NCBI RefSeq assembly: GCF_006345805.1
Contig: NC_043014.1
Coordinates: 34,410,001-34,474,000 of the forward strand
Source: Octopus sinensis
Lineage: Eukaryota
Reading direction: 5' to 3'
DNA: 64,000 bases
In this document: piece by piece, positions 22,673 to 63,800 of the stretch
How positions within the stretch are numbered: position 1 is the first letter of the stretch
Layout: each line of letters starts with the position of its first letter
Program-made: the position numbers and the translations under genes
Notes under the pieces: model-generated
The model's input: only the letters and a program-made list of their open reading frames with translations
Told to the model about the DNA's origin: nothing
Databases searched by the model: none

Positions 22673-22781
22673 AAATTAAAGAAAGCTGAAGATTTATCAG
22701 TTATTGATAACCGGCTAACTACATTAGAAGCACGGAAACCAGAAAATCGCAACAAAAATCGATATAGAGATGTAAATCCAT
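22673..22781 (+). CDS. PTPN1: PTPN1/PTPN2-like tyrosine phosphatase, internal exon A (109 nt, phase 0-1): KLKKAEDLSVIDNRLTTLEARKPENRNKNRYRDVNP(Y)
   Basis: Polypyrimidine tract and CAG acceptor at 22670-22672; donor GTGAGT at 22782. Contains the pTyr-recognition motif KNRYRDV. Not in the ORF track. Confidence 0.95.
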
Positions 22782-34075: not shown

Positions 34076-34182
34076 ATGATCACAGTCGTATAATATTAGA
34101 TGTCAATAATGGTTGTGGAGATTATATTAATGCAAATCTCATCGAAATTAGCAAGGCAAACCGGAGATATATCCTCACACAG
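34076..34182 (+). CDS. PTPN1: PTPN1/2-like exon B (107 nt, phase 1-0): (Y)DHSRIILDVNNGCGDYINANLIEISKANRRYILTQ
   Basis: Poly-T and TAG acceptor; DYINA and YILTQ motifs. The donor is CAG|GCAAGA (non-canonical GC). Confidence 0.93.
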
Positions 34183-37100
34183 GCAAGAATATTTCTTTAG
34201 ACTGCTTAGCCTTTTGTTTTTCCAGTCTCTTGTAATTTTCTCTCAGTATTAATTCAAAATCTTTGAAAGCTGTTGAAATTGTATTCCATCTGTGTGTGTT
34301 TGTTTTCAAGCTTTAATCAAAGCAGGAAGGCTAATGGCCATCACCTTTTTGCAAGTATTCAGAGACTGTTGTTTGGATGGATAAGCAATGATTGATGGCT
34401 TGCTGCAGTAGAAAGTTGGGTAGCAGCACACGGTATTATCAAGTTAGCCTCAAACCATAGAACTGATCTGAATGCTTGCAACAAAGTGGAATCTGCAAGA
34501 TGCACCAAAGGTGGTACTCTTAAATTGGATGGTGGATTAGAGCTACCCTTGAAGAACAGGTTCAGTTCAACAGTCTTCTGCTCATTTTTCATCTCCCGAT
34601 TTCACTCAGAAGGCTTTGGTTGATTCAAGATTGTGGTACAAAACACTTGCCCAAAATTCTACACAGTGGGATTGAATCCAGAACCATGTGATTGCAAAGC
34701 AAACATCTTAATATCATGACCATGCCTATACCTTCAGGTTTTGTCAATAGTACTGGACTACAAACTGAAGGACTGAAGGGTTTGTAGTTCATATCCTGAT
34801 ATTGCCTTCTATCCATGAAAGAAGAAAATTCTAACTTATTAACTCTGAATGGTAAAACTGGGAAGTTGCAGTTCATTGATAAAAGTGGAAAGAACACTGT
34901 GGTGGTGAGTTCATGTCCTTCCAAGGGACACAGTAATTACAAGATCCTGATATCCAGTGTAAGAAATCAACAGTATCCTCAGAAGTTCAATTTCTTTATA
35001 GTACTTCCAGTGGGATAAAGTTTACAAATATTAAATATTACAATCATATCTTCTTTTTGGCCCTATGGTCATCCAGTCATTCTGTTGTCTAGAATAAATG
35101 TTTGTCTTCTAACTCAACATAAGAAGTTAAATTGTGCTCCAGTGAACAGCCCTGATGGACACTAATTGGACTCCAATGAGGAGCCCCAAATGTCTAGCAA
35201 GACTATTTATTGTTCATTAAACAATTTTGTTTTCTAAGGTATAAACATACTCATCATGTTTGTAGACTTCTCAGCTTGGAAAGAGTGATGCAATTTGATG
35301 CCTAGATGTAAATTTGCAATAGTGAATCAGTTAAGGACATCCAAAGACTATGTACTGATGTTAAAGTGTCTTGCTAGGCCTGCGAACCATGTATTAAAAA
35401 AAGCACTAAATTTTCATTACATCATAGTGAAGGTTAATTTAACTAAAAATATTTGAGTGATGGGATTACTGTAGCCCTGTATGCATGAGGGGGTTGCTGT
35501 AGCACCATATGAGTGACAGGATTGCTGTGACACTGCATAAGCAATGGGGTTGCTACAGTGCTGCATGAGTGATGGGGTCACTGCAGCGCGACACAAGGAA
35601 GTCAATTTCATTGACCTTATTTACTCAGTTGCTACTTGTTTTATCAACCCTGAAAAGATGAGAGGTGAAGTTAATCATGGCAGCATTTGAACTCAAATGT
35701 AATGAATTAGAAGAAATACTACTAAGCATTTTGTCTAAAAAGCTAACAATTCTGCCAGCTCACACCTCTAATAATAATATAATGATAATGATTTCTAACA
35801 TAGGCATGAGGTTTCACATTCTAGGGAAAGTTTATATAGTTGATTAAATCATCGTCTCCAGAACTAGATTGGAACTTATTTTATTGACCCCAGAAGGATG
35901 AGAGTCAACCCCATTGTGCACTTAAACTTGGAATGTAAAAGGAGTGTGAATAAATGTTGCAAAACATTTTGTACAGCTGTCTATTGATTTTTGCAATTCA
36001 ACAGTAAAAAAAAAAAAGCATTTTGTCCTGCAGTCTACTGACACTGCCATCATACAGTGAAAAACATTAAAATTTTTTCCTCTAATTTTTTTCTTTTTTT
36101 TTTTATTTTTCTCACCCAAAATAATTGTACTTGTGAAAAGCCTTTGTTTTTAATATTCTTGGCTCAACAAAGACATTTTAAATCATCAACTAGCCACAGT
36201 TAGCTAATTTGTGAAAACATTAATTCTAACAAGGTTACTATTGTTTACTGTTGACTTTCATCTTGTACAATAGCCTCATTAATGAATATCACTGCACTTA
36301 AGGGAGAAGGAGAAACAAAAGAGGAAAACAATAGTAAAAAAAAATTTATATAATCATCATCATCATTATTTTTATGTCTTTTTTTGTCCATGTGGTTTTT
36401 TGAGGCAGTATTCTACAGCCTGATACTGCATGGCTTATTAGTTACAGCATTCGCAGTACTTGACCTATGATCAGAAGGTTGTGAGTTGGTTTCCTAGAGG
36501 TGTGTTGTATCCTTCAGCAATGCACTTTATTTCACATTGCTCCAATCCGCTCAGCTGGTAAAAACGAGTAGTATTGATATTTCAAAGGGCCTGCCTTGTC
36601 ACATTCTGTGTCATGCTGAATCTTCCTGAGAACTACTTGGAGTGCTCAACCACTTGCTCATTAATTTCTTGAGCAGACTGTTTCATTGATTGGATCAGCA
36701 GGAACTCTCATCATTGTAACCAATGCAAATATCCTTCCTGCTAATCTTTCCTTCTTCTCAAGCACTGTACTTTAACCCGTGTTTTTGCTTGTAAAACTGC
36801 TGAGCTACTGGACTTATTTGTTTATGCAGGACATAAACATTACTACTTCCCAAGCAACACTGGTGCAAAGACACGCACGCACGCGCACACACACACACAC
36901 ACACAATGACTGGCTTCAGTTCAGTTTGTGCTTATCAGATTTCATTTACAAGTTGTTGGTCAACCTATGCTTATAGAAGGCATTTATCCAAAGGGCTGTG
37001 CAGTAGGATCAAAACCATATATATGTAGCAGGAAGCAACCTTCTTAATCATATAGGCATTTTTACACAGATGCACACCTGCATACACACACAGGTACAAT

Positions 37101-38699: not shown

Positions 38700-38798
38700 G
38701 GTCCTTTGGAAAACACAGTTGGCCAGTTTTGGCAAATGGTCTGGGAACAGAACACTATGGGTATTGTTATGCTCAATAGAATTATGGAAAAAGGAACT
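38700..38798 (+). CDS. PTPN1: PTPN1/2-like exon C (99 nt, phase 0-0): [33 protein letters not shown]
   Basis: TTCAG acceptor and GTAAGT donor; GP/FWxMVWEQ/IVMLN motifs. Same length as I recall for human PTPN1 exon 4. Confidence 0.96.
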
Positions 38799-39805: not shown

Positions 39806-39955
39806 GTCAAATGTCATCAATACTGGCCACCAGGTTCCAAACATGGCTATGACGAAGACTTGACATTTTCTGATTCTGGTTTCAAAGTGGTTCTGTTAAA
39901 AGAAGAGGAAAATGAACATTATATTGTCCGATCTTTAAGATTGTGGAACCTTAAT
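39806..39955 (+). CDS. PTPN1: PTPN1/2-like exon D (150 nt, phase 0-0): VKCHQYWPPGSKHGYDEDLTFSDSGFKVVLLKEEENEHYIVRSLRLWNLN
   Basis: AAG acceptor at 39803-39805 and GTAAGT donor at 39956; KCxxYWP motif. Lies inside ORF 39797-40135. Confidence 0.93.
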
Positions 39956-44809: not shown

Positions 44810-45019
44810 ATAGATGAGTCTCGCAATGTGTTGCATTTCCAGTATACCACTTGGCCAGATTTCGGAGTTCCATCTTCACCACATACTTTCTTAAATTTCT
44901 TGATGGCTGTTCGAGAGTCTGGATATCTAAATAATAATGTAGGTCCTTGTATAGTTCATTGCAGTGCCGGAATTGGTCGATCGGGAACATTTTGTTTAGT
45001 TGACTCAGCACTTGTTATT
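44810..45019 (+). CDS. PTPN1: PTPN1/2-like exon E (210 nt, phase 0-0), WPD loop and catalytic P-loop: [70 protein letters not shown]
   Basis: TTTCAG acceptor and GTAAGT donor. WPDFGVP and [10 protein letters not shown] are intact. Same length as I recall for human PTPN1 exon 6. Confidence 0.97.
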
Positions 45020-47354: not shown

Positions 47355-47537
47355 GTTGAGAAAGACTGGAATATGGATGTGATTGATGTTGAAAGTATGT
47401 TGCAAGATATGCGTTATTACCGCATGGGACTAGTCCAAACACCTGACCAACTACGCTTCTCTTTCTTGTCTATCATTGACGGTGGCAAACAAATCTTAAG
47501 CAATCCTCCCCCCATCAAGGAAGATGAAATAGACACG
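47355..47537 (+). CDS. PTPN1: PTPN1/2-like exon F (183 nt, phase 0-0), Q-loop: VEKDWNMDVIDVESMLQDMRYYRMGLVQTPDQLRFSFLSIIDGGKQILSNPPPIKEDEIDT
   Basis: CTAG acceptor and GTAAGT donor at 47538; RMGLVQTPDQLRF motif. Confidence 0.96.
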
Positions 47538-48889
47538 GTAAGTTTGCTATATGCTTATTTGACCACACTCTCCCTTGTTTTAAATATATATAAATTATAT
47601 ACGTACACACCATCATCATGTGTGAGTGTGTCAGTTTGGTTGTGTGTATGTATGTGTGTCTGTCTCTATGTATGTATATGATGATCATGCATTTGTATCT
47701 CTGTTTCTTGCTTTTGTGTGTTCGTTTTTGCTGCCTGAACAAACATTCAGATGTGGAGAAATTTGGAGTAGAAGTAGTTTGAATTATCTGCTTTGAATGG
47801 GTAAACGATGGGCTACAAATATAACAGGAAATTTTTTAATTAAAGTAGAGCCCTTGTAATCTTGAAAATTTAACGACGGATTTGTGATTTGCGTAATAAC
47901 TAGTTTAGTCCTTTCTTACTAATCCCGTTAAAATTCTCATTTTTTATCAAGGGGCATAATTCAGGGAGTCTACAATTGGTGTCGAGAAGGTTATCTCCCC
48001 TGAACTGTTACTGATAAAGTTCTGGTGGTTAAGATAAAAAACTTGTGCAAATTGTGGTGGAGAAATGTTATGGGAATAAATGCAGAAAAGTTTTTTATTT
48101 GGCTATAATGGATCTGATGTTGAAACTGTTTGGATTAAAACAAAAATTTCTGTCGCAATTGTGTGCGTGCGTGCGTTCACACATGTCCACATCTATTGCT
48201 TGAGTGTGAGAATGACTTTTTGAATTGGCTACTCTTTTAAGGTGGTGAGCTGGCAGAAACGTTAGCATGCCGGGCGCAATACTTAGCGGTATTTCATCTG
48301 CCATTACGTTCTGAGTTCAAATTCCGCCGAGGTCAACTTTGCCTTTCATCCTTTCGGGGTCGATTAAATAAGTACCAGTTAAGCACTGGGGTCGATATAA
48401 TCGACTTAATCCGTTTGTCTGTCCTTGTTTGTCCCCTCTATATTTAGCCCCTTGTGGGCAATAAAGAAATATGCATAAGCTTTCTGTAGCATTTGCAATT
48501 GTCTGTGGGTAATTTAAGAGCACATCTATAAAATTGACATTATGTCCATGGTTACAGTTAAGCTGCGTTCCAAGACTTCAAAGGTTTAAATTTTTGTATA
48601 GCATTAAGGGTGATTTAATCACTACCTTAACCACCAACTTATAAATCAAATGAAATTAACAAGACACTGTAAGTTCTCTCTTGCTGCGTTTGAACCTCAC
48701 ACCACTATTTTTGTCTGATCATTGCCTGTAGACACAAAACTATGAGTAATAAAATATAAAGTAGATTGAGCTAATGTACACAAAAAGTTACTCTATTTTA
48801 GGTATTGTGTTCTTTTAAGTTGTCTTTGAAGTAAATTTGTAAGTAGAACCCCCCCCCCCACTCTCTCTCAGGTATTTGTGTGTGTATGC

Positions 48890-49140: not shown

Positions 49141-51547
49141 ATTGATGTCCAAAAATCATGTGTATGCACACAACTGGATCCTTCACCCAATTTGACTTTA
49201 TCAAACCCTTTATTTTCTCATCTTCCTATCACTTACCCCTCCACCACTCTTCCAACTACTACTTTATTCTGTACTATAATAAAAGAACTACATATATCAC
49301 CCCTTTCTATGCACCTAGTTATCTTGCATTTTTTCTTGAATAAACTTCCTTTTGATATTCAGCCTTCATTTTTTTACTTCATTCCTCCTCACTTTCCATT
49401 AATTACTCTTTTTGTGCTATGCCTTGCGTTATCTCTCCCTTCCCTTGAACCACTTCTTATCAAATCCCATATTTCATTATTTACAGTCTCATCTACCATC
49501 AACTCCCTCCTACCTTTGTTTACCACTCACCAGATTCACACCCACATACCTCTGACCATTTCCACACTTTTGCCATCTTTAAATCATCTCTCTACCTCTC
49601 ATCCTTCCCCTATTTACTGTTTCGTTTTGCTACTCATCACTCTTTCTCTACTGTCAGTTATTGCCTCCTCACCTCTGAGCCACTTCTATTGACATCTGTC
49701 CCTCGTTCCTATCTTCCTCCTAACTCATTTTTACCATTGACCCCTTCTCCCATCTCTCACTCTTGCAACCTTTACTTACCATCATTCTTCCATCTCTCTC
49801 CCTCTCTCCTCCATCTCTCTCCCCCCTTCTTTTCCTCTTCTCATAACTTGAAGTTAAGCTCTGATACCTTGTTGCCACCATCTTTATATTTCTTTCTAGC
49901 TAACTCCACCTTAGTTACTCCTACCCACCCTTATATAATGAGGGGTAGCCATGTATCTCCTGTACAACAACAAACATGTGCTTGTCCCTTCTATCATACT
50001 TTAATGTCTCGACACTTAGCATAAAACTATCTTCCCCTCTATTGTACTCCCACTCAGTCAAGTGGGCTTTTTAGTCTTGTGAATTTACACGGCAACCTCA
50101 TTAGTGCTGGTGCTATGGAAACATTACCCTGTAGTCTCTTCAAAATGGGCGTCAGGAAGGGTATTCAGCTGTAGGAAGCAGACATTGGAGCTTGATGCCG
50201 TCCTCTTACTTGTCAGATCCTGTAGAACCATGCAACCTGATCCAGCATGGAAGACAGATGTTAAATATGATGATTAAGTTTGAAAATGCTTCATTTCATT
50301 GTAGATGTTTGTGTGTGTATCTTGTTTCATTGAGAAGGATGTATACAGTAGGATGTATATTGTTTGACATTGTTATAATGTGGAGTATTGAGACAAGGAA
50401 AGGAATATATTGTTACAAGTAAAGAACCTTCTCACGATTGAATAATTTACATTATATCAATTTCTCCCTTCCTAGTGTTTCCTTTTTTTCTCTTTCTTTC
50501 TTTATTTTCTCTCACTTTCTCTCTTTTCTTTTTCTTGTTTCCTGGAGGTAACCCCCACCTCAAAAAAAACACCCACCCACTCACTTAGGCCCTGTACTAA
50601 TAGCTATATCTGACTCAAATGTCTGACCCAAACTTTGGCAGCTATCTCCTCACTTTACTTCACACTTACCACTTCATTAGGACTGCTAATTCATCATCAT
50701 CATCATCATCGTTTAACGTCCGTTCTCCATGCTAGCATGGGTTGGACGGTTCGACCGGGGATCTGGGAAGCCAGAAGGCTGCACCAGGCTCCGGTCTTAT
50801 CTGGCAACGTTTCTACAGCTGGATGCCCTTCCTAACGCCAACCACTCCGTGAGTGTAGTGGGTGCTTTTTACGCGCCACCTGCACTGATAAATATAAAGT
50901 TCAATGAAATGAAACTAATAGCAGCCAACCACTTTTGATCACACTTTATTACACTACCTTCTTTCTGTTTCTGATCATACCAATTCAGTTCATTCCTTGT
51001 CTCTGTTTGATACAGTTTTAACTCTTTCAAGCTGGGCTAACCCACCTCCACTAGCGTTAATCTTGTTTGAAAGTATTCTGTTTTTAGGACTGGCCTGGGA
51101 GACTGGAATTGGTTTTGCACTTCTGTTTGTCCATCTTCATCTTTCTCTCTCATACACACGCACACATGTAGTACTGCCTGCCGATTTACCTATTATATAT
51201 ATAATGTGAAGGCGCATGGCTCAGTGGTTAGAGCATCGAGCTTACGATCGTGAGGTTGTGAGCTCGAATCCCGGACCGGGCTGCATGTTGTGTTCTTGAG
51301 CAAAGCACTTCATTTCACGTTGCTCCAGTTCACTCAGCTGTAGAAATGAGTTGCGACATCACAGGTGCCAAGCTGTATCGACCTTTGTCTTTCCCTTGGA
51401 TAACACTGGTGGCGTGGAGAGGGGAGGCTGGTATGCATGGGCGACTGCTGGTCTTCCATAAACAACCTTGCCCGGACTTGTGTCTAGGAGGGTAACTTTC
51501 TAGGTGCAATCCCATGGTCATTCGTGACCGAAGGGGGTCAAGTCAAG

Positions 51548-52123: not shown

Positions 52124-52361
52124 GTTTGTTTCATTTGTCTTGAAACTTTCATGAAATTACTTCACTGTCTGAGAATAATGTTATTTCCCAAAAGAAAAGC
52201 TTCTTTGTATGTATTTATTATTCAGCTTTCCTCTAACTGAAAGAATTACATGTGCCTCACCCGAAATAGTTGTTTGTTGTCAGTGTTTTTTTTTTTTTTT
52301 CTTTTCTTCTTCTGTGTATGTGTTTTTTTGTTTTTTGCTATGCTATTGCATATTTTTGCAG

Positions 52362-52388
52362 CATACTAAAAGATTGTTCTTCAAAAGG
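52362..52388 (+). CDS. PTPN1: Candidate 27-nt in-frame microexon of the PTPN1/2-like gene: HTKRLFFKR
   Basis: About 76 nt of AG-free, U-rich sequence with TGC at 52336, 52341 and 52347, then a TTTTGCAG acceptor. The donor is AGG|GTAAGT. Phase 0-0 matches exon F and there is no stop codon. Confidence 0.65.
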
Positions 52389-52878
52389 GTAAGTTCTGTA
52401 TTTTCTTTGACGCCCAGTTTGTTCTCTAAGCTGGCCTTTATTTGGCACAGGTTCACATTTGCTAGAGAGCAGAATGTTTCTCTTTCGTTTACTGGCACAA
52501 GTTCATGGCAATATCCATTCTGTTTGTAATCGTTAAGTAGCCGACTTAATTAATACTTTGGTGTTGCACCAATCTATTATCTTTTTAAGCTCAATGCTTG
52601 AGATTCAGCTTCACTCAGGTTATTCAAGAGACATTGCTTGAGCCAACCAGCCGTTAACCTGCAGTGGTTCCTACTAAACATGTTTCATTTCAACCATCAT
52701 TCATCAACTGTCTGTGCTCCTGCAAATACACACACACACACACGTAAATATTGAACAATGAGAATGAGTGCTCAACATCACACTGGTGGATAAAGATTCG
52801 TTATTTGTGTATGTTCCATATGATAAGCTTGATAATTGTTAAGGTATTCCTTAACATGAAACTAATGGTAACCTTAAT

Positions 52879-53219
52879 ACGCAAATATAGTATATATATA
52901 AATTAGAAGAAAAACACCTTTTATCAATTCAAAATGAAAAATTAAATTAAATTACACCATCTAGAAAATTACATATAATAGAAATATTAAATATAAGATA
53001 AAAAATAATATACCGATAATTAAGTAATGTGCAAAATAATAAATAAAACGTATATATTTATTATTTTGCACATTACTTAATCATCGGTATATTTTTTATC
53101 TTATATTTAATATTTCTATTATATATAATTTTCTAGATGGTGTAATTTAATTAAATTTTTCATTTTGAGTTAATAAAAGGTGAGTTTTTTCTAATTTATA
53201 TATATATTATATTTTGTGA
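52879..53219. repeat. AT-rich near-perfect palindrome (~165-bp arms, ~9-nt loop 53046-53054)
   Basis: ...TACACCATCTAGAAAATTA...GTGCAAAATAATAAATA [loop] TATTTATTATTTTGCAC...TAATTTTCTAGATGGTGTA... Confidence 0.92.
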
Positions 53220-54800: not shown

Positions 54801-54815
54801 ACATTCTATATATAT

Positions 54816-55200
54816 ACATCATCATCATCATCATCATCATTTAGCGTCCGTTTTCCATGCTAGCATGGGTTGGACGGTTCAACTGGGGTCTGGGGAGCCC
54901 GAAGGCTGCACCAGGCCAGTCAGATCTGGCAGTGTTTCTACAGCTGGATGCCCTTCCTAACGCCAACCACTCCGAGAGTGTAGTGGGTGATTTTATGTGC
55001 CACCGACACAGGTGCCAGACGAGGCTGGCGAACGGCCACGCTCGGATGGTGTTTTTATGTGCCACCGACACAGGTGCCAGACGAGGCTGGCAGACGGCCA
55101 CGCTCGGATGGTGTTTTTATGTGCCACCGACACAGGTGCCAGATGAGGCTGGCGGACGGCCACGATCGTGGCCGTCCGCCAGGATGGTGTTTGTTCCGTG
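54816..55200 (-). mobile_element. RTE 3' UTR fragment with ~3.5 tandem 58-60-bp units
   Basis: (CAT)n head and repeated ATGTGCCACCGACACAGGTGCCAGACGAGGCTGG units. Inverted partner of 40500-40783. Confidence 0.88.
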
Positions 55201-55279: not shown

Positions 55280-55597
55280 CATATTTCGTTTTTGGATTTG
55301 GTTTGCAAGATTCTTTATGAGTTCGTGTGTTGAAGCATATTCTGTTGTGTCTGGGGAGAGTCATTCTCTTTCAGTGCCTTATTATTTAACACACTCACCG
55401 GTAAAATTTCCACTTATTTCTTATTTTTATTTTCTAAAATTTTCATTGCGTCTTGCAACCTTTTCAAGGCTATTGAAAAGGTTGCAAAACACAACGAAAA
55501 TTTTAGAAATAAAAATAAGAAATAAGTGGAAATTTTACCGGTGAGTGTGTTAAATAATAAGGCACTGAAAGAGAATGACTCTCCCCAGGCACAACAG
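55280..55597. mobile_element. Palindromic long-TIR element (arms ~126 bp, 5-nt loop GGCTA at 55468-55472) plus 65-bp tail
   Basis: 55342-55597 is self-complementary and is homologous to 25108-25412. Confidence 0.88.
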
Positions 55598-55683
55598 TAT
55601 ATATACATATATGTATATATACATATATATATGTATGTATATATATGTATATGTATATATATGTATGTATATATATGTATATG

Positions 55684-55720
<37 letters not shown>

Positions 55721-58392
55721 GTATATGTATATATATGTATATGTATATATACGTATATGTATATATATGTATATATACGTATATGTATATATATGTATAT
55801 GTATATATATGTATATGTATATATATGTATATATATGTATATGTATATATATGTATATGTATATATACGTATATGTATATATATGTATATATACGTATAT
55901 GTAATAATGTATATATACGTATATGTATATATATGTATATATACGTATATGTAATATACGTATATGTATATATACGTATATGTATATATACGTATATGTA
56001 TATATACATATATGTATATATACGTATATGTATATATACGTATATGTATATATACATATATGTATATATACGTATATGTATATATACGTATATGTATATA
56101 TACGTATATGTATATATACATATATGTATATATACGTATATGTATATATACGTATATGTATATATACATATATGTATATATACGTATATGTATATATACA
56201 TATATGTATATATACATATATGTATATATACATATATGTATATATACATATATGTATATATACATATATGTATATATACATATATGTATATATACATATA
56301 TGTATATATACATATATGTATATATACATATGTATATATATATATGTATATATGTATATAACATATGTATATATACATATATATATGTATATATACATAT
56401 ATATGTATATACATATATATATGTATATATACATTATATATGTATATATACATATATATATGTATATATACATATATATATGTATATATACGTATATATA
56501 TGTATATATACGTATATATATGTATATATACGTATATATATGTATATATACGTATATATATGTATATATACGTATATGAATATATACGTATATGTATATA
56601 TACGTATATGTATATATATGTATATATACATATATATATGTATATATACGTATATGTATATATACGTATATGTATATATACGTATATGTATATATACGTA
56701 TATGTATATATACGTATATGTATATATACGTATATGTATATATACGTATACGTATATATACATATATATACATATATATATGTATATATACATATATATA
56801 CATATATATATGTATATATATATATATGTATATGTATAATATAATGTATATATATGTATATGTACATATATATATGTATATATATGTATATGTACATATA
56901 TATATGTATATGTATATATATGTATATGTATATATACATATATATATGTATATATATGTATATGTATATATACATATATATATGTGTATATATATGTATA
57001 TGTATATATACATATATGTATGTATATATATATGTATATGTATATATACATATATGTATGTATATATATGTATATGTATATATACATATATGTATATATA
57101 TATATGTATATGTATATATATGTATATGTATATATATGTATATGTATATATACATATATGTATATATATATATGTATATGTATATATGTATATGTATATA
57201 TACATATATGTATATATACATATATTATATATATATTATAATGTATATATACATATATGTATATATATGTATGTATATATGTTATGTATATATATGTATA
57301 TGTATATATACATATATATATGTATATATACATATTATACATATATATATGTATATATACATATATATATGTATATATATGTATATGTATATATATACAT
57401 TATATATGTATATATAATATATTATGTATATATACATATATATATGTATATAATGTATATGTATATATACATATATATATGTATATATATGTATTATGTA
57501 TACTATACATTATATATTTATATATATATGTATATATACATATATATATGTATTATATATATGTATATATATCATATATATATGTATATATACATATATA
57601 TATGTATATATATGTATATTACATATATATTATATATATATATGTATATACATATATATATGTAGTATATGTATATGTATATATATATGTATATATATGT
57701 ATATGTATATATATGTATTGTATATATATGTATATATATGTATATTTATATATATTATATATGTATATGTATATATACATATATATATTATATGTATATA
57801 TACATATATATCTGTATATATATGTATATGTAATATACCTATATATATGTATCTATGTATATTTATCTATACATATATATATGTATATATATGTATATGT
57901 ATATATACATATTATATGTATATATATGTATATGTATATATACGTATACATATATATATGTATATATATGTATATGTATATATACGTTATATATATATAC
58001 ATAGGAACATATGTATATATATATATGTATATATACGTATATGTATATATGTATATATACGTATATGTATATATGTATATATACGTATATGTATATATGT
58101 ATATATACGTATATGTATATATGTATATATACGTATATGTATATATACGTATATGTATATATATATACGTATATATATATATATATATATAGAATATGCA
58201 TATATACTTATATATAGAATATGCATATATACTTATATATAGAATATGCATATATACTTATATATAGAATATGCATATATACTTATATATAGAATATGCA
58301 TATACTTTATATAGAATATGCATATATACTTATATATAGAATATGCATATATACATATATATAGAATATGTATATATATAATATGTATTTCT

Positions 58393-58420
<28 letters not shown>
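55598..58420. repeat. ~2.8-kb compound TA-rich satellite (TA/TATG/TACA/TACG, 16-18-bp higher-order units; terminal ~24-bp TATATATAGAATATGCATATATACT-type unit x ~7)
   Basis: Read directly. Source of the spurious Y/I/H/M ORFs. Confidence 0.97.
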
Positions 58421-58427
<7 letters not shown>

Positions 58428-58843
58428 GCATTTGTCTGCCAGTGGTCGTGCTTAAAGTCTCACTTAGTTGTGAGAAGTTTGTTTTGGGATGCATATCCCT
58501 CCTGAAAATTGTTTTAGTTTAACTGCTATTTTTGACTGGTATTTCTGACTGTTTTTGTGCCCGTGGATTACCATTTTGGCCAGGAGTACCGGGACGGCCA
58601 GGAAAATTACTGTTTTTTGTGTCTCACTTAATTGTGAGAAACCAAAATCGAAATTTTGTGCTGCGACGGAACACTGTGGATTACCTGTGTAGTGGAATTG
58701 TGTTGCCATTTGAACTGTCTTCCTTCATTCTGTTTCTTCTCTCCTCTGTCTTTCCATTCTTTTTTGTGTTTATTATTGACTTTAATTTGAATTTTTGAAC
58801 TTTTGTGTTGAACATTTTACATTTTATCTATTTATTTATTTTT

Positions 58844-59759
58844 AATATTCTCCCAAAGAGTCTGAGGAACTTGCACAAAGTAGATGTAGCGGTTTTTAAA
58901 TCAAAGCTGGACATCTTCCTGTTCAGAGTCCCAGATGAACCTACCTCACGGCAAGAGGTGCAAATGAGAGTAGCTATATCAAACTCCATTCTTCACCAAG
59001 TGCCACATATTAGAGGAGGTTCTTCGTAATAACAGTGTAGCACAAAACGGCGGTGCATCAGCATGGCTGCAGCTCTGAGCTGAAATAAAAAAATAAAAAA
59101 AATATGACAACAAAAAATACTGTTTTGGGTTTTGGAGCGGCAAATAGTAGCCCCCAAACAGCGGTTGCAAAATTTTTCTGAGAGAATGGTGGTGTTAAGA
59201 ACCTATTCTAAGGTTCTTGACACCATCACTGTGTTCTCACAGACAGACATTATAAAAGAGTTGGCAGAGCACCTGCCAATGATTAAGTTTATCCAAAGGG
59301 GTGTTAAATACACGAGTGTGTGTTGTTTGACACCCCTGCGGAGGCTCGAGATTTCGCGAGCAGGCCATTTACATATTTGGCATTGAAAGCTACACCAATG
59401 CCAGAACAGGGCGACATTGCATATTGCCAAAGATCCCAGTAACGCCATTGTGCTTCAGGACCAGTTACTGCAACTGCCTGGGTTTCAGGGGCCCACAGCT
59501 TTTTAATATTCTTCCAAAAAGCCTGAGGATCCAGCACAAAGTTGATGTAGGTGTTTTTAAATGAAAGCTGGACCTCTTCCCGTCGAGAGTCCCAGATGAA
59601 CCTACTTCATGGCAAGGGGTGCAAATGAGGGTAGCTACATCAAACTCCATATTTCTTCAAGTGCCACATATTGGTGGAGGCTCTCTGTAATAACAGTATA
59701 GCAAAAAAACAGTGTATCAGCATGGCTGCAGCTCTGAGCTGAAACTACCGGAAAAAAAA
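58844..59759 (+). mobile_element. Two tandem L2/CR1-type LINE 3' ends (58844-59101 and ~59130-59759), each with an A-rich tail
   Basis: Both translate to FNILPKSLR...VDV.VFK.KLD.F..RVPDEPTS.Q.VQMRVA.SNSI..QVPHI.GGS and share the 3' UTR CAGCATGGCTGCAGCTCTGAGCTGAAA. Confidence 0.8.
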
Positions 59760-59760
59760 A

Positions 59761-59824
59761 TATAACATGTATATATATAATATGTGTATATAATATATAT
59801 ATATATGTATATATATAATATGTG

Positions 59825-59877
<53 letters not shown>

Positions 59878-60812
59878 ATGTGTATATAATATATATATAT
59901 ATATATATAATGTGTATATATAATATGCATATATATATGTGTATATATATAATATGCATATATATATATATATGTGTATATAATGTGTATATATATTTGT
60001 GTATAATGTATTTGTGTGTTTATGTGCATATGTATATGTGTGTGTATATGTATATAAATAGATATGTGTGTGTGTGTGTATATATATATACACACATACA
60101 TATATGTATGTATATATGTATATATATATGTATTATGTATGTATATATGTATGTATATGTATATATATGTATGTATATGTATGTATATATATATATATGT
60201 ATGTATCATCATCATCATCATCATATATATGTATATATGTATGTATATATATATATGTATGTATGTATATATATATATATATATGTATGTATGTAATATA
60301 TATATATATGTATGTATGTATATATATATATGTATATATGTATATATATATGTATGTATGTATATATATATATGTGTATATATGTATATATATATGTATG
60401 TATGTATATATATATATGTATATATGTATATATATATGTATATATATGTATATATGTATATGTATGTATGTATATATATATGTATATATATGTATATATG
60501 TATATGTATGTATGTATATATATATATGTATATATGTATGTATATATGTATATATGTATATATATATGTATATATGTATGTATATATATATATATGTATA
60601 TATGTATGTATGTGTATGTATGTATGTATATATTATGTATGTATGTATTATATATATATATATATGTATGTGTATGTATGTATGTATATATATATGTATG
60701 TGTATGTATGTATGTATATATATATGTATGTGTATGTATGTATGTATATATATATGTATGTATGTATATATATATATATATATATATATTATGTTCATAT
60801 GTGTATTATATA

Positions 60813-60848
<36 letters not shown>

Positions 60849-60850
60849 AT
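59761..60850. repeat. ~1.1-kb TA/TATG compound microsatellite with an embedded (CAT)n run (~60205-60222)
   Basis: Read directly. Confidence 0.97.
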
Positions 60851-63800
60851 GTAGATATACTCAATATTCAATTTTTGGGGATTAATCGATATGCAGGTAT
60901 TCTATTTCAGATAATACAAAAATAACCTAATGAGTATATCTGAAAAGGGTGAAGGGGCTCACTTCATTATTTCATCTTTCATTTATTTAAAGCAATCGTT
61001 TAAAAACAATTGTTACTTATTGTAAATTTTTGAACTTGAACTTGGGCCATTCACAGTGAAAACACCACCTTGAGTGTGTGTTTGTTCACCTCACTATTGT
61101 TGTCGTTGTTATTATTATTATCATTATTATTATTATTATTATTATGTTAAGCATTTTCTGCAACCAGTTCAGTTAAAGTGACTTTGCTACCCTGCTGCAC
61201 ATTTTCTCACTTTCACTTTTGAAGAAAGAACCGTTTGGAAGTTTCGGGACAAAAATTGGTTTTGAACTTTGCAAAGCTTTCTTTCTGTTGATTGTTTTTT
61301 TTTTTGTCTTTCTTTCCTTTAGAACACACTTCCACATCTTCCATGATTGCTGTAGATTGTAGGTTCAAAATGCTTGATGCCCATGCCACTGCAAAATTTC
61401 AGCTTTGCTTGGCCAAAGACTGGAATTGTGAAAATTTTTTTTTTTTTGTTGTAGGTGTAGAAAAAACAACTGCAATAAAAGATGTCAAAGCAGTTGTAAT
61501 AGTAATAGTACACATCAGTGATAGCAACAGTAACCTAAGCACTACTGATTTTTGTTGTAATAATGTTGTGTATTAAAAATTTTTTTTCTACTCTCCATCA
61601 AATGCAACACATCATGTAATTCAATTTAATTTAATCTTTATGCACACACTTCTACACACTTACACATCAACGCCCCCATCACATACACATTAACTATGTA
61701 CTCACTTTTACACATCTCTATGCCATATACACTATATGCACTCACAGGATCACTGTGCTCCCACCATACACATGTTACTACATGCTGAAACTCTTTACTT
61801 TGTTCCTACCATATTAACACATTTCAATATTCTCCAGTTATCCTAGTACATTATCACTGCAAAATTTGGTCATACACTCACATACTACCCTTATACAGTT
61901 TACATTCGCACCATAGTATTCTATCGCTATACAAGTTATATTCTTGCTCTCATGTAAAATTTAGTCATACTAACAAATTACTACTATAAAGTTTAGTCCC
62001 GCACTTTGTGTGCAACCTAATATAGCATCCCAATAAAATATAGTCACATTCTTGTCTGCCACTCCTACAAAATATGCTGTTGTTGTTGTTAAGCAACAAG
62101 ACGGGTAAGGGTGATTAGGTGATGGTCTAGGGCTTAGGGGCGGGAGACCCCAGACCTTGGGAAAAAAAACTTTGGTCATCTTGTTGTAGTCGAGGGCCCT
62201 TCGTTGATGCCTGACACCACTGGGAGGTGGCCCTCGAAGTCACTGGAAATGGAGATCTCCAGGTCCAAATTCTTGGACGGCTAAAAAATATACTGCCATG
62301 CCATAGTCTGCTACCCCTATAAAATTTTGTCACTCTCCTTGTACATTGCCTCTATAAAATTTAGTTATACTCTAGTGTACTGTCTTGATAAAATATACTG
62401 TCATTCTTAAATGGTACCCTTATCACTATCCTGCATTACGTTATTATATTGTTACTAGTTAAGTACAATGATCAAGATAATTGAATGCCACCCCCTGCTC
62501 ACACACACACACACACACACATGATTTAGTAAAGGCAGCTGAGTGGCAAAAATTTAACCCTTTTGCATTCACATCATTTTGTCAAAAGCAATGCTTATTT
62601 ATTCACATTGTTTTGAATTAGTCATGCATTATCTTGTAACTTTGGGAGTTTGTATGAGGCGATTGTTAATGTTTAGAATGACATTGTAGGTTAGGTATGA
62701 GAGGCTTAGATCTGACCGGTTTGGATATAAAACTGGTAGAATATTTTTGCTGGATATGGCCAGTTTGAATGCTAAAGAGTTAAAGCTTTGTTTTAAGTTA
62801 AAATCATTTCAAGATCAACTTTGCTTTTCAATGTTCACTCTGAAGTTGGTGGGGTACATCTCAAGAACATAAATACTAGTCAGCCTTTCAGTGTTCTGTT
62901 GGGAAGGGGGAAATATATTCCAAGACAATAAATACTAATTATCTAATGGGAATGTTTCAATTAACTATGTCAAGTGCCTCAAAAATTGTTGCCTTGTGCA
63001 GCTAATTTTGGTCATTATTTCCTCGTAATATCACAAAATATTCTGAAGAAGTCGTTTTTTTTTGTTTTTTTTTTTTACTTTTTAATTAAAGTTATGAGAT
63101 TTTAGTAAAAAATTCAAGTCTACCTGCTTCAGTTACATTAATATGACCTTCTACTGTTGTGGTCATTCTTTCAAAAAGTTACTCTGGCATAAAGCGGAAG
63201 TTTGTTGATGTCATAATGTTTGTGACAAAAGTGAAGGCGAAGAATATGCTGTCTTCTAATAACAAATTTACTGAATCATGGGTGGGAGTGGCAAATATGT
63301 TTTAAATGAATGGACCCTTTGTCAGCATGTGATTGTAAGCTGGAAAATGCAGCTGGGAGAGGGAAGTCAAGGCAATTTTGGATCTGCAGAATTTTTTGAT
63401 TGACATAGGTGGCTGTCCTCCTTTTGGGATGCTTTGCCTCTTTCTTAAAAGAAATTGTCATTAGTGCTGCAAACTGGCAGAATTGTTACTACACTTGGCA
63501 AAATGCTTTGCAGGCTTTTTTTTTCTTTTTCTGAATTGTTACATTCTGAGTTCAAGGGATTAACTTAGTTCTTCATTCCTCTAGCATCAATAAAATAAAG
63601 TACCAGTGAAGTTTTGAGATTAATGTAACTGACTTGTCCTCTTGCCTTGTGGCTTTGTGCCTAAAGCAGAAACTATTATTATTATTCATAGTAGTAGTAG
63701 TATTAAGGTAGTGAACTGGCAGAATCATTAGAGCATCTGATGAAATGTTTAGCAGCATTTCTTTCAGCTCCTAATGTTCTGAGTTCAAATCTTGCACCAA

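What the first reader, a model, noticed from the sequence alone, without database searches (positions are those of the whole stretch)
52284..52394. Candidate neural 27-nt microexon (HTKRLFFKR) inserted just after the PTP catalytic domain
Seen: TTTTGCAG|CATACTAAAAGATTGTTCTTCAAAAGG|GTAAGT. The exon is exactly 27 nt, phase 0-0, has no stop, and is in frame with exon F. It is preceded by ~76 nt without any AG, long U tracts, and three TGC triplets at about -26, -21 and -15. Established: UGC motifs just upstream of the 3' splice site, a long AG-exclusion zone and a strong donor are the signature of microexons activated by the SRRM3/4 eMIC domain, a neural program found across bilaterians. Inference: a neuron-specific isoform adds a basic 9-mer. 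KRLF fits a cyclin-docking RxL motif, and the basic cluster could act as part of an NLS. The insertion falls near the position of the allosteric alpha7 helix of PTP1B/TC-PTP. I know of no such exon in vertebrate PTPN1/2.
Basis: partly seen in the sequence, partly recalled or inferred. Interest (0 to 1): 0.78.

Follow-up and report, generated by a model that had tools for sequence, protein, structure and literature searches.

The report
Conserved cephalopod PTP1B-like microexon
The 27-base segment is a real, alternatively spliced mini-exon of an octopus PTP1B/TC-PTP-type phosphatase gene. It has been kept in octopuses, argonauts and cuttlefish and is already annotated in a sister octopus, but whether it is brain-specific could not be tested here.

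Summary
Window 52362-52388 is a 27-nt, phase 0-0 open segment, TTTTTGCAG|...|GTAAGT. It has a 76-nt AG-free, U-rich tract upstream and UGC at -26, -21, -15 and also -5.

It lies 4.8 kb into the 21.4-kb intron between exon 7 (ends 47537) and exon 8 (8.9 kb past the window) of a tail-anchored PTPN1/2-like gene.

It is a genuine cassette exon:
- O. bimaculoides RefSeq isoform X1 equals X2 plus HTKRFFFKR at exactly this junction.
- Cuttlefish RNA-seq assemblies contain transcripts with and without a 27-nt (PLKRFLFKR) or 30-nt (PIKKLTFKRR) cassette at the same junction.
- Argonauta keeps a 30-nt in-phase version with the same splice sites.
- Between the two Octopus species, a 232-nt block around the exon has only two mismatches, against about 85% identity in the surrounding intron.

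The neural and eMIC reading is plausible but unproven. The UGC/AG-exclusion signature is exceptional in octopods but absent in cuttlefish. An SRRM_C (eMIC) domain is encoded in the genome. No tissue data were reachable.

The RxL motif is not conserved and no classical NLS pattern is met. The conserved feature is (K/R)2-x3-K-R. AlphaFold puts the insert in a disordered linker just before the PxxP motif.

Verdict: a new member of a known kind, of moderate interest.

The parts
22673..22781 (+). Host gene exon 2 (KLKKAEDL...NRYRDVNP). Exon 1 lies about 37 kb upstream of the window.
34076..34182 (+). Host gene exon 3 (DHSRIIL...YILTQ), which has a GC donor.
38700..38798 (+). Host gene exon 4 ([17 protein letters not shown]...).
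39806..39955 (+). Host gene exon 5 (VKCHQYWP...).
44810..45019 (+). Host gene exon 6, carrying the WPD loop and the catalytic motif [11 protein letters not shown].
47355..47537 (+). It holds the end of the catalytic domain (QTPDQLRFS...KEDEIDT) and ends in phase 0 with a strong donor, ACG|GTAAGT.
52284..52361 (+). 3' splice-site region of the microexon. It comprises the 76-nt AG-exclusion zone, a long U tract (52286-52335), a UGC cluster (52336, 52341, 52347, 52357) and the acceptor AG (52360-52361). GCUAUUGC is shared with Argonauta.
52362..52388 (+). 27-nt cassette microexon encoding HTKRLFFKR, phase 0-0.
52389..52541 (+). 5' splice site GTAAGT plus a downstream intronic flank that is 100% identical to O. 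bimaculoides. The perfect run is 155 nt (52387-52541) and includes the last two exon bases.
52441..52459 (+). Candidate intronic splicing element TTTGGCACAGGTTCACATT. It is 16/19 identical, at the same offset from the donor, in the cuttlefish genome.

Best explanation
Window 52362-52388 is a genuine alternatively spliced 27-nt cassette microexon of an octopus PTPN1/PTPN2-type (PTP1B/TC-PTP-like), ER-tail-anchored tyrosine phosphatase gene.

Shown:
- It sits in the 21.4-kb intron 7 and is in phase with exon 7 and exon 8.
- Its orthologue is spliced into mRNA in some transcripts and skipped in others, in O. bimaculoides and in at least three cuttlefish-type (decapodiform) species.
- The exon, its length class (27 or 30 nt), its splice sites and a (K/R)(K/R)-x3-K-R core are kept across octopods and decapodiforms.

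Inferred:
- Inclusion needs help from flanking intronic elements. These are the U-tract plus UGC cluster in a long AG-free zone upstream, and an ultraconserved 150-nt flank downstream.
- In octopods the activator is most likely the eMIC domain of the Srrm234 orthologue, acting in neurons. I put this at about 0.5.

At the protein level the exon inserts nine basic/hydrophobic residues into a disordered, otherwise acidic linker. The linker lies between the end of the catalytic domain and the SH3-binding PPxPPKR motif. With the insert, the linker reaches PTP1B length.

The most likely effect (inferred, about 0.5) is to change partner binding at the adjacent PxxP motif, or to change electrostatic contact of the linker with the catalytic domain or the membrane. 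A cyclin-docking site or a nuclear import signal is less likely.
For: Gene model:
- Exons 2-7 in the window and exons 1, 8 and 9 outside it.
- The best solved-structure matches are PTP1B, E about 1e-99.
- The final exon (exon 9) encodes a hydrophobic tail-anchor-like C-terminus.

Transcript-level support:
- XP_014789897.1 (541 aa) equals XP_014789898.1 (532 aa) plus HTKRFFFKR at EIDT|NCEM.
- The O. bimaculoides genome has CATACTAAAAGATTCTTCTTCAAACGG with identical flanks.
- Logan RNA-seq contigs give Sepia esculenta-type PLKRFLFKR in 11+4+1 contigs, against skipping in 131+17 contigs. A third decapodiform has PIKKLTFKRR in 4 contigs against 3 skipping.
- Inclusion and skipping CDS differ by exactly 27 nt.
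- SRR19578102 is S. esculenta whole-larva RNA.

Genomic orthologues:
- Acanthosepion pharaonis ttacag|27 nt|gtgagt.
- Argonauta TTTTTGCAG|30 nt NKHKRHISKR|GTAAGT, in phase.
- 21 of 27 nt are identical between octopus and cuttlefish (my base-by-base count from the sequences shown).
- The block 52310-52541 has 2 mismatches in 232 nt versus O. bimaculoides, against about 84% overall.

Cis-signature rarity. Published eMIC-exon architecture: PMC8797185. SRRM_C hit of 32.6 bits against a 27-bit cut-off in G000.

Disorder of the insert: pLDDT below 50 for residues 310-318. Equal linker length to PTP1B.
Against: - No transcript of the window's own species could be examined. The O. vulgaris model CAI9737705 lacks the exon.
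- Tissue specificity is wholly untested.
- The cuttlefish 3' splice site has no UGC within 50 nt and only a 37-nt AG-free zone. An eMIC-type mechanism is therefore not supported for the whole clade.
- The hydrophobic core is not kept in Argonauta (HIS instead of FF or LF).
- AlphaFold confidence in the linker is low, and the alignment holds few sequences with the insert.
Confidence: 0.88

Rival explanations
1. The exon is real and alternative, but it is not a neuron-specific eMIC target. Inclusion would be set by other factors (stage-, muscle-, gonad- or broadly variable splicing), for example through the conserved downstream intronic element.
For: - The cuttlefish orthologue lacks the UGC and long-AGEZ signature yet is still alternatively included.
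- The strongest conservation lies downstream of the exon, a 155-nt perfect run. eMIC acts upstream.
- Inclusion isoforms are assembled from whole-larva RNA.
Against: - The octopod 3' splice site has 4 UGC in 26 nt plus a 76-107-nt AG-free zone. That combination is unique among 2445 intronic AGs and matches published eMIC targets.
- An eMIC-type domain is encoded in the genome.
- Whole larvae are brain-rich, so larval inclusion does not argue against neural use.
Confidence: 0.4
2. In the window's own species the segment is a relic or pseudo-exon. It would be used in O. bimaculoides and cuttlefish but no longer spliced here.
For: - The O. vulgaris gene model (P0124) has no insert.
- No transcript of this species could be retrieved.
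Against: - Both splice sites, the frame and 25 of 27 nt are intact.
- The two changes versus O. bimaculoides are one conservative L/F change and one synonymous change.
- The flanks are 100% identical over 52 nt upstream and 153 nt downstream, which implies ongoing constraint.
- A gene model without a 27-nt exon is the usual default of annotation pipelines.
Confidence: 0.04
3. The conserved 232-nt block is a non-coding element (an enhancer or a structured RNA), and the open 27 nt is coincidental.
For: Conservation extends far into the downstream intron.
Against: - mRNAs of four species contain exactly this segment between the same two exons.
- The length stays a multiple of three (27 or 30).
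- There is no Rfam match on the block.
Confidence: 0.02

Closest known systems
Neural microexons activated by the eMIC domain of SRRM3/SRRM4 (Srrm234 in invertebrates)
   Same: - Length of 27 nt or less and frame-preserving.
- Strong donor, and a strong donor on the upstream exon.
- Long AG-exclusion zone, U/pyrimidine tract and UGC motifs packed next to the 3' splice site. This is the architecture described for fly and mammalian eMIC exons in PMC8797185.
- Highly conserved intronic flanks.
- Location in a signalling protein next to an interaction motif.
   Different: - Neural inclusion and eMIC dependence are untested.
- The cuttlefish orthologue lacks the UGC signature.
- The exon is coleoid-specific. 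No counterpart was seen in 120 bilaterian PTPN1/2 homologues.
- The insert lies in a predicted disordered linker.
Human PTP1B (PTPN1) and TC-PTP (PTPN2): the alpha7 / proline-rich / C-terminal regulatory segment
   Same: - The host protein has the same architecture: catalytic domain, linker, PPxPPKR motif, long disordered region, basic coiled segment and hydrophobic tail anchor.
- The insert aligns to PTP1B residues 295-303, at the end of alpha7 and just before the Pro-rich motif.
- TC-PTP is auto-regulated by its intrinsically disordered tail (abstract of PMC8748766, seen). Regulation by a charged, disordered segment next to the catalytic domain therefore has a precedent; that the critical TC-PTP tail residues are basic is from memory, not read here.
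   Different: - Vertebrate PTPN1/2 isoform diversity is at the extreme C-terminus (TC45/TC48), not at this junction. This rests on my own knowledge.
- The cephalopod linker is Pro-rich and no alpha7 helix is predicted.
Other alternative splicing in the same linker of lophotrochozoan PTPN1/2 genes
   Same: - The same intron and the same phase.
- Patella caerulea isoforms differ by 8 aa at this junction.
- Lingula and Physella isoforms differ by the exon carrying the PxxP motif.
   Different: - Patella uses an alternative 5' splice site (+24 nt, VKTIAENT), not a cassette.
- There is no sequence similarity to the cephalopod KR-x3-KR exon.

Membership tests
Alternatively spliced cassette microexon | Length 3-27 nt (up to about 30 nt in looser definitions) with canonical AG/GT borders | tested here: met
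   27 nt, cag|...|gtaagt. Orthologues are 27 or 30 nt.
Alternatively spliced cassette microexon | Preserves the reading frame between the flanking exons | tested here: met
   Phase 0-0. Exon 7 ends and exon 8 starts in phase 0.
Alternatively spliced cassette microexon | Both inclusion and skipping are seen in mRNA | tested here: met
   Met in orthologues: O. bimaculoides X1/X2 and cuttlefish contigs with and without an exact 27-nt cassette. Not testable for the window's own species.
eMIC (SRRM3/4, Srrm234)-dependent neural microexon programme | Inclusion enriched in neural tissue | not testable with these tools
   No read-level or tissue-labelled data. Run accessions gave no tissue metadata except whole larvae.
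eMIC (SRRM3/4, Srrm234)-dependent neural microexon programme | Inclusion depends on an eMIC-domain protein | not testable with these tools
   This needs a minigene or knock-down experiment.
eMIC (SRRM3/4, Srrm234)-dependent neural microexon programme | [quoted passage not shown] | tested here: inconclusive
   Met in Octopus (UGC at -26, -21, -15, -5; AGEZ 76 and 67 nt). Partly met in Argonauta (UGC at -22, -5; AGEZ 107). Not met in Acanthosepion (nearest UGC at -54; AGEZ 37).
eMIC (SRRM3/4, Srrm234)-dependent neural microexon programme | The genome encodes an eMIC / SRRM_C domain | tested here: met
   PF15230 hit of 32.6 bits (cut-off 27) at G000:C11337:11167-11301, reading ...RRRPGSPSHLDKRRIT....
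PTPN1/PTPN2 (NT1) subfamily, for the host gene | Classical PTP domain with WPD loop, [10 protein letters not shown] and Q-loop, and closest to PTP1B/TC-PTP | tested here: met
   Motifs. PDB best hits are PTP1B, E about 1e-99. Homologues are named PTPN1/2.
PTPN1/PTPN2 (NT1) subfamily, for the host gene | Proline-rich SH3-binding motif after the catalytic domain and a C-terminal hydrophobic tail anchor | tested here: met
   PPMPPKR in exon 8 and ...LTPLYIGIVLALGGSLLLYRYY in exon 9. A long C-terminal helix is predicted.
Cyclin-docking RxL motif ([RK]-x-L-phi) | R/K-x-L kept in orthologues | tested here: not met
   KRLF in the window, but KRFF in O. bimaculoides and KRHI in Argonauta. Cuttlefish RFLF and KKLTF fit only after a register shift.
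Classical nuclear localisation signal | K-(K/R)-x-(K/R), or bipartite KR-x10-12 followed by a basic cluster | tested here: not met
   By inspection of the peptides printed (no pattern scan was run), none of the orthologous peptides with their flanks contains either pattern. The protein also keeps its tail anchor. Weak, non-classical NLS activity cannot be excluded.

The most novel reading that the evidence does not exclude
The microexon is a coleoid-cephalopod innovation that arose in the common ancestor of octopuses and cuttlefish or squids. It would act as a neuron-specific, eMIC-driven switch on the PTP1B/TC-PTP orthologue. Inclusion would convert the acidic linker into a basic-aromatic segment of PTP1B-like length. 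That segment would dock back on the catalytic domain (alpha7-like allostery or TC-PTP-like tail regulation) or retune SH3 binding at the adjoining PxxP motif. The result would be a brain-specific setting of tyrosine-phosphatase activity, with no counterpart in vertebrates.
Probability: 0.2. Interest if true: 0.65.

Novelty: new member of a known kind. Interest (0 to 1): 0.45.

Why it matters
PTP1B and TC-PTP are intensively studied regulators of insulin, leptin, JAK/STAT and synaptic signalling. Their control by the alpha7/linker/tail segment is a drug-design theme.

A 9-10-residue insert at exactly that place has been kept for the whole history of coleoid cephalopods and is switched on and off by splicing. 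It is a natural experiment on how that segment tunes the enzyme. It would also be a clean, testable example of lineage-specific microexon evolution in the large-brained invertebrates.

The exon is absent from at least one gene model (O. vulgaris). In Acanthosepion pharaonis it is partly included in a truncated model that starts at an invented mini-exon. These annotations can therefore be corrected.

Tried and rejected
- A 118-aa query across the junction, meant to catch octopus RNA-seq fragments, found only a genomic read-through contig of another octopus.
- Searches of the paper library for 12 run-accession strings (full accessions and prefixes) gave tissue information for one project only, S. 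esculenta whole larvae. The with/without pattern among runs (for example SRR21372857 versus SRR21372852/55/56/58-60, and SRR30931879/881 versus 882-884) could not be interpreted.
- The only paper in the library that mentions both 'microexons' and 'Octopus' includes O. bimaculoides tissues. It names no phosphatase, and its supplements are not held.
- Among the 15 papers listed by the two-of-five-term search (the ranking favours title and abstract hits), none contained 'microexon'.
- A homologous cassette was sought outside cephalopods. None of 120 homologues carries the motif. Isoform pairs of 10 other species differ elsewhere or by other mechanisms.
- Rfam found nothing on the conserved block. 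Its only hits are far below threshold, most on a TA microsatellite.
- YCAY (NOVA-type) clusters downstream were considered and rejected by eye only: three sites in 155 nt, about chance by a rough estimate. No tool call supports this.
- Shared 8-mers downstream are not above shuffled controls overall, apart from the position-matched GTTCACATT.
- The alpha7-like docking idea was tested with AlphaFold and got no support. The insert is predicted disordered.

Full report
**1. What is in the sequence**

Window 52362-52388 reads CATACTAAAAGATTGTTCTTCAAAAGG, which translates to HTKRLFFKR. It follows ...GCTATGCTATTGCATATTTTTGCAG and is followed by GTAAGT.

The nearest upstream AG is at 52282-52283, giving a 76-nt AG-free zone that is 70% T. 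TGC sits at -26, -21, -15 and also -5.

**2. The host gene**

The plus strand carries a classical PTP gene ([18 protein letters not shown] and QTPDQLRFS motifs). I placed six exons in the window:
- 22673-22781
- 34076-34182
- 38700-38798
- 39806-39955
- 44810-45019
- 47355-47537

The window is G000:C18:34410001-34474000 of a 2.72-Gb, 13,516-contig genome. From memory, those numbers fit Octopus sinensis.

Exon 1 (MSTSVERQFKEHDQNGLWNGVFK) lies 37 kb upstream. Exon 8 (NCEMPPMPPKRTTSLMP...) lies at extended coordinates 68908-69356. The last exon, with a basic coiled segment and a hydrophobic tail anchor, is at 72492-72702.

Exon 7 ends in phase 0 and exon 8 starts in phase 0. Intron 7 is 21,370 nt long, and the candidate sits 4.8 kb into it, in frame on both sides. 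The closest solved structures are PTP1B, E about 1e-99. Homologues are annotated PTPN1 or PTPN2.

**3. Is it more than chance?**

Intron 7 contains 535 in-phase, stop-free AG...GT segments of 9-51 nt. Six have a GTRAGT donor. Only this one also has at least 75% pyrimidines in the 60 nt upstream. Nothing else in 164 kb (both strands) passes.

Only 0.29% of 2445 intronic AGs have four or more TGC in the preceding 40 nt, and 2% have an AG-free zone of at least 76 nt. Only this AG has both. The eight constitutive acceptors of the gene have zero or one TGC.

The thresholds were chosen after seeing the candidate, so these numbers describe rarity. They are not a formal test. The surrounding 301 nt are single-copy in the genome.

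**4. Direct evidence that it is an exon**

A first protein search missed the octopus orthologues because they exceed the tool's length window. A second search with the full-length model found O. bimaculoides XP_014789898.1 (isoform X2, 532 aa). Its cluster also holds XP_014789897.1 (isoform X1, 541 aa).

X1 equals X2 plus HTKRFFFKR, inserted exactly between ...KENEIDT and NCEMPPMPPKR. The O. bimaculoides locus carries CATACTAAAAGATTCTTCTTCAAACGG at the orthologous place. It shows two substitutions, one L to F and one synonymous, and identical splice sites.

I infer that a 27-nt exon in a RefSeq model comes from transcript alignment, not from ab initio prediction.

**5. Conservation across coleoids**

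The next-best hits are RNA-seq assemblies (Logan) of decapodiforms. Their clusters contain length pairs of 478/487 aa and 481/491 aa. The longer forms carry an insert at the same junction:
- PLKRFLFKR
- PRKRFLFKR
- PIKKLTFKRR

Each lies between ...DDPL and NP(D/E)IPPVPPKR.

Inclusion and skipping transcripts of one species are identical apart from an exact 27-nt cassette. One inclusion run, SRR19578102, is Sepia esculenta whole-larva RNA.

Contig counts are as follows:

| Species group | Inclusion contigs | Skipping contigs |
|---|---|---|
| Sepia cluster | 11 + 4 + 1 | 131 + 17 |
| Third decapodiform | 4 | 3 |

Within single run series, some runs assemble only the inclusion form and others only the skipping form. 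This is what a regulated switch would give, but no metadata were available.

Genomic copies:
- Acanthosepion pharaonis...tatttttacag|CCTCTTAAAAGATTTCTCTTCAAACGG|gtgagt.
- Argonauta hians: a 30-nt in-phase version, TTTTTGCAG|AATAAACATAAAAGACATATCTCCAAGAGG|GTAAGT (NKHKRHISKR), not annotated.

Octopus and cuttlefish share 21 of 27 nt. That is my base-by-base count from the sequences shown. The constant protein feature is (K/R)(K/R)-x3-K-R. An aromatic or aliphatic middle is present in all but Argonauta.

From memory, octopods and decapodiforms separated roughly 250-300 million years ago.

**6. Flank conservation**

The window and O. bimaculoides are about 84% identical over the 1.3 kb around the exon. 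The stretch 52310-52541 (232 nt) has only two mismatches, both inside the exon. The perfect runs are 66 nt (flank plus the exon start) and 155 nt (downstream flank).

A 19-mer, TTTGGCACAGGTTCACATT (52441-52459), recurs 16/19 identical at the same distance from the donor in the cuttlefish genome. No Rfam family matches the block. Such intronic conservation is typical of regulated cassette exons.

**7. How it is probably regulated**

Published work on fly and mammalian eMIC-dependent exons describes three features. [quoted passage not shown] For the fly exons alone it also reports a strong upstream 5' splice site, unlike mammalian microexons.

Octopus has all of these. Argonauta has an AG-free zone of 107 nt and UGC at -22 and -5. 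The genome encodes an SRRM_C/eMIC-type domain above Pfam's cut-off, reading ...SPSHLDKRRIT....

The cuttlefish acceptor is different. It has no UGC within 50 nt and an AG-free zone of 37 nt. The eMIC reading is therefore plausible for octopods but not established for the clade.

Neural specificity itself could not be tested. I put neural, eMIC-driven inclusion in octopus at about 0.5.

**8. What it does to the protein**

With the insert, the octopus linker aligns without gaps to PTP1B 280-316. HTKRLFFKR falls on PTP1B 295-303 (SHEDLEPPP). That is the end of alpha7, just before the Pro-rich SH3-binding motif.

The cephalopod linker is proline-rich (SNPPPIKEDEIDT). AlphaFold2 on O. bimaculoides X1 with 100 homologues gives a confident catalytic domain up to about residue 300. 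Residues 310-318 have pLDDT below 50 and no helix. The caveat is that few rows of the alignment contain the insert.

The insert changes an acidic linker into a basic/hydrophobic one, four to five residues ahead of PPxPPKR. The most economical reading is modulation of partner binding, or of linker contacts with the catalytic domain or the membrane. TC-PTP is known to be auto-regulated by its disordered tail (abstract of PMC8748766, seen).

The RxL idea fails on conservation (L, F, H). By inspection, no orthologue matches a classical mono- or bipartite NLS, and the protein stays tail-anchored.

**9. Distribution outside cephalopods**

None of 120 bilaterian PTPN1/2 homologues shows the motif in this region. 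I examined isoform pairs of ten other species:
- Patella differs by 8 aa at the homologous junction, but through an alternative 5' splice site.
- Lingula and Physella skip the exon with the PxxP motif.
- Ostrea and Littorina differ elsewhere.

The linker is thus a recurrent site of splicing variation. The KR-x3-KR cassette, however, appears coleoid-specific. This is a weak test, because clusters show representatives only.

**10. Verdict**

The exon is real, conserved and alternatively used. It is already present in one RefSeq annotation, but the literature searched does not describe it.

The neural and eMIC interpretation is reasonable for octopods and remains to be tested. The specific peptide-function guesses (RxL, NLS, alpha7) are not supported. 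The finding is a new member of a known kind, of moderate interest.

Noticed in passing
window 34183-34188: Exon 3 of the phosphatase gene uses a GC donor (CAG|GCAAGA). The same GC is present in O. bimaculoides, whereas Argonauta has GT (CAG|GTAACA).
   Followed up: partly
window 55400-61000: Intron 7 holds a TA/TATG/TATAC-type microsatellite field of about 5.5 kb. GC falls to 0.13 at 56-58 kb, which produces long spurious 'YIYI' open frames on both strands.
   Followed up: no
window 48237-48408, 50696-50885, 54807-55105: Interspersed repeat copies that each match several places in the O. bimaculoides locus at 73-87% identity.
   Followed up: no
window 52441-52459 and 52494-52510: The intronic motif TTTGGCACAGGTTCACATT recurs at the same offset from the donor in cuttlefish (TTTGGTACTAGTTCACATT). 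A second similar copy, CTGGCACAAGTTCATGG, lies 50 nt further on. No known binding factor could be assigned.
   Followed up: partly
L034:10001-10082 (Acanthosepion pharaonis CAHIKZ030000724.1): The deposited model CAE1235654.1 (P0125, 177 aa) is a truncated gene. It starts at an invented 12-nt 'MPKK' piece 44 nt upstream of the real microexon (56 nt start to start) and joins it into the microexon. The phosphatase gene is split in that annotation.
   Followed up: partly
L054:18358-18423 (Patella caerulea): The 500- and 492-aa limpet isoforms differ by an alternative 5' splice site (+24 nt, VKTIAENT) of the exon homologous to exon 7. Lingula and Physella isoforms skip the exon with the PxxP motif. 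The linker intron is a recurrent site of splicing variation.
   Followed up: partly
G000:C18 extended coordinates 69120-69160 and 69230-69255 (exon 8, outside the window): The poly-threonine and poly-serine runs of the disordered region differ in length between the window's species, O. vulgaris and O. bimaculoides. These are coding microsatellites.
   Followed up: no
G000:C11337:11167-11301: An open frame ending ...RRRPGSPSHLDKRRITRYGP matches Pfam SRRM_C (the eMIC region) above the cut-off. It sits on a small unplaced contig, and the rest of the Srrm234 gene was not traced.
   Followed up: partly
window 53009-53091: A weak mir-2763-like match (28 bits against a gathering score of 50). It is most likely chance.
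   Followed up: no
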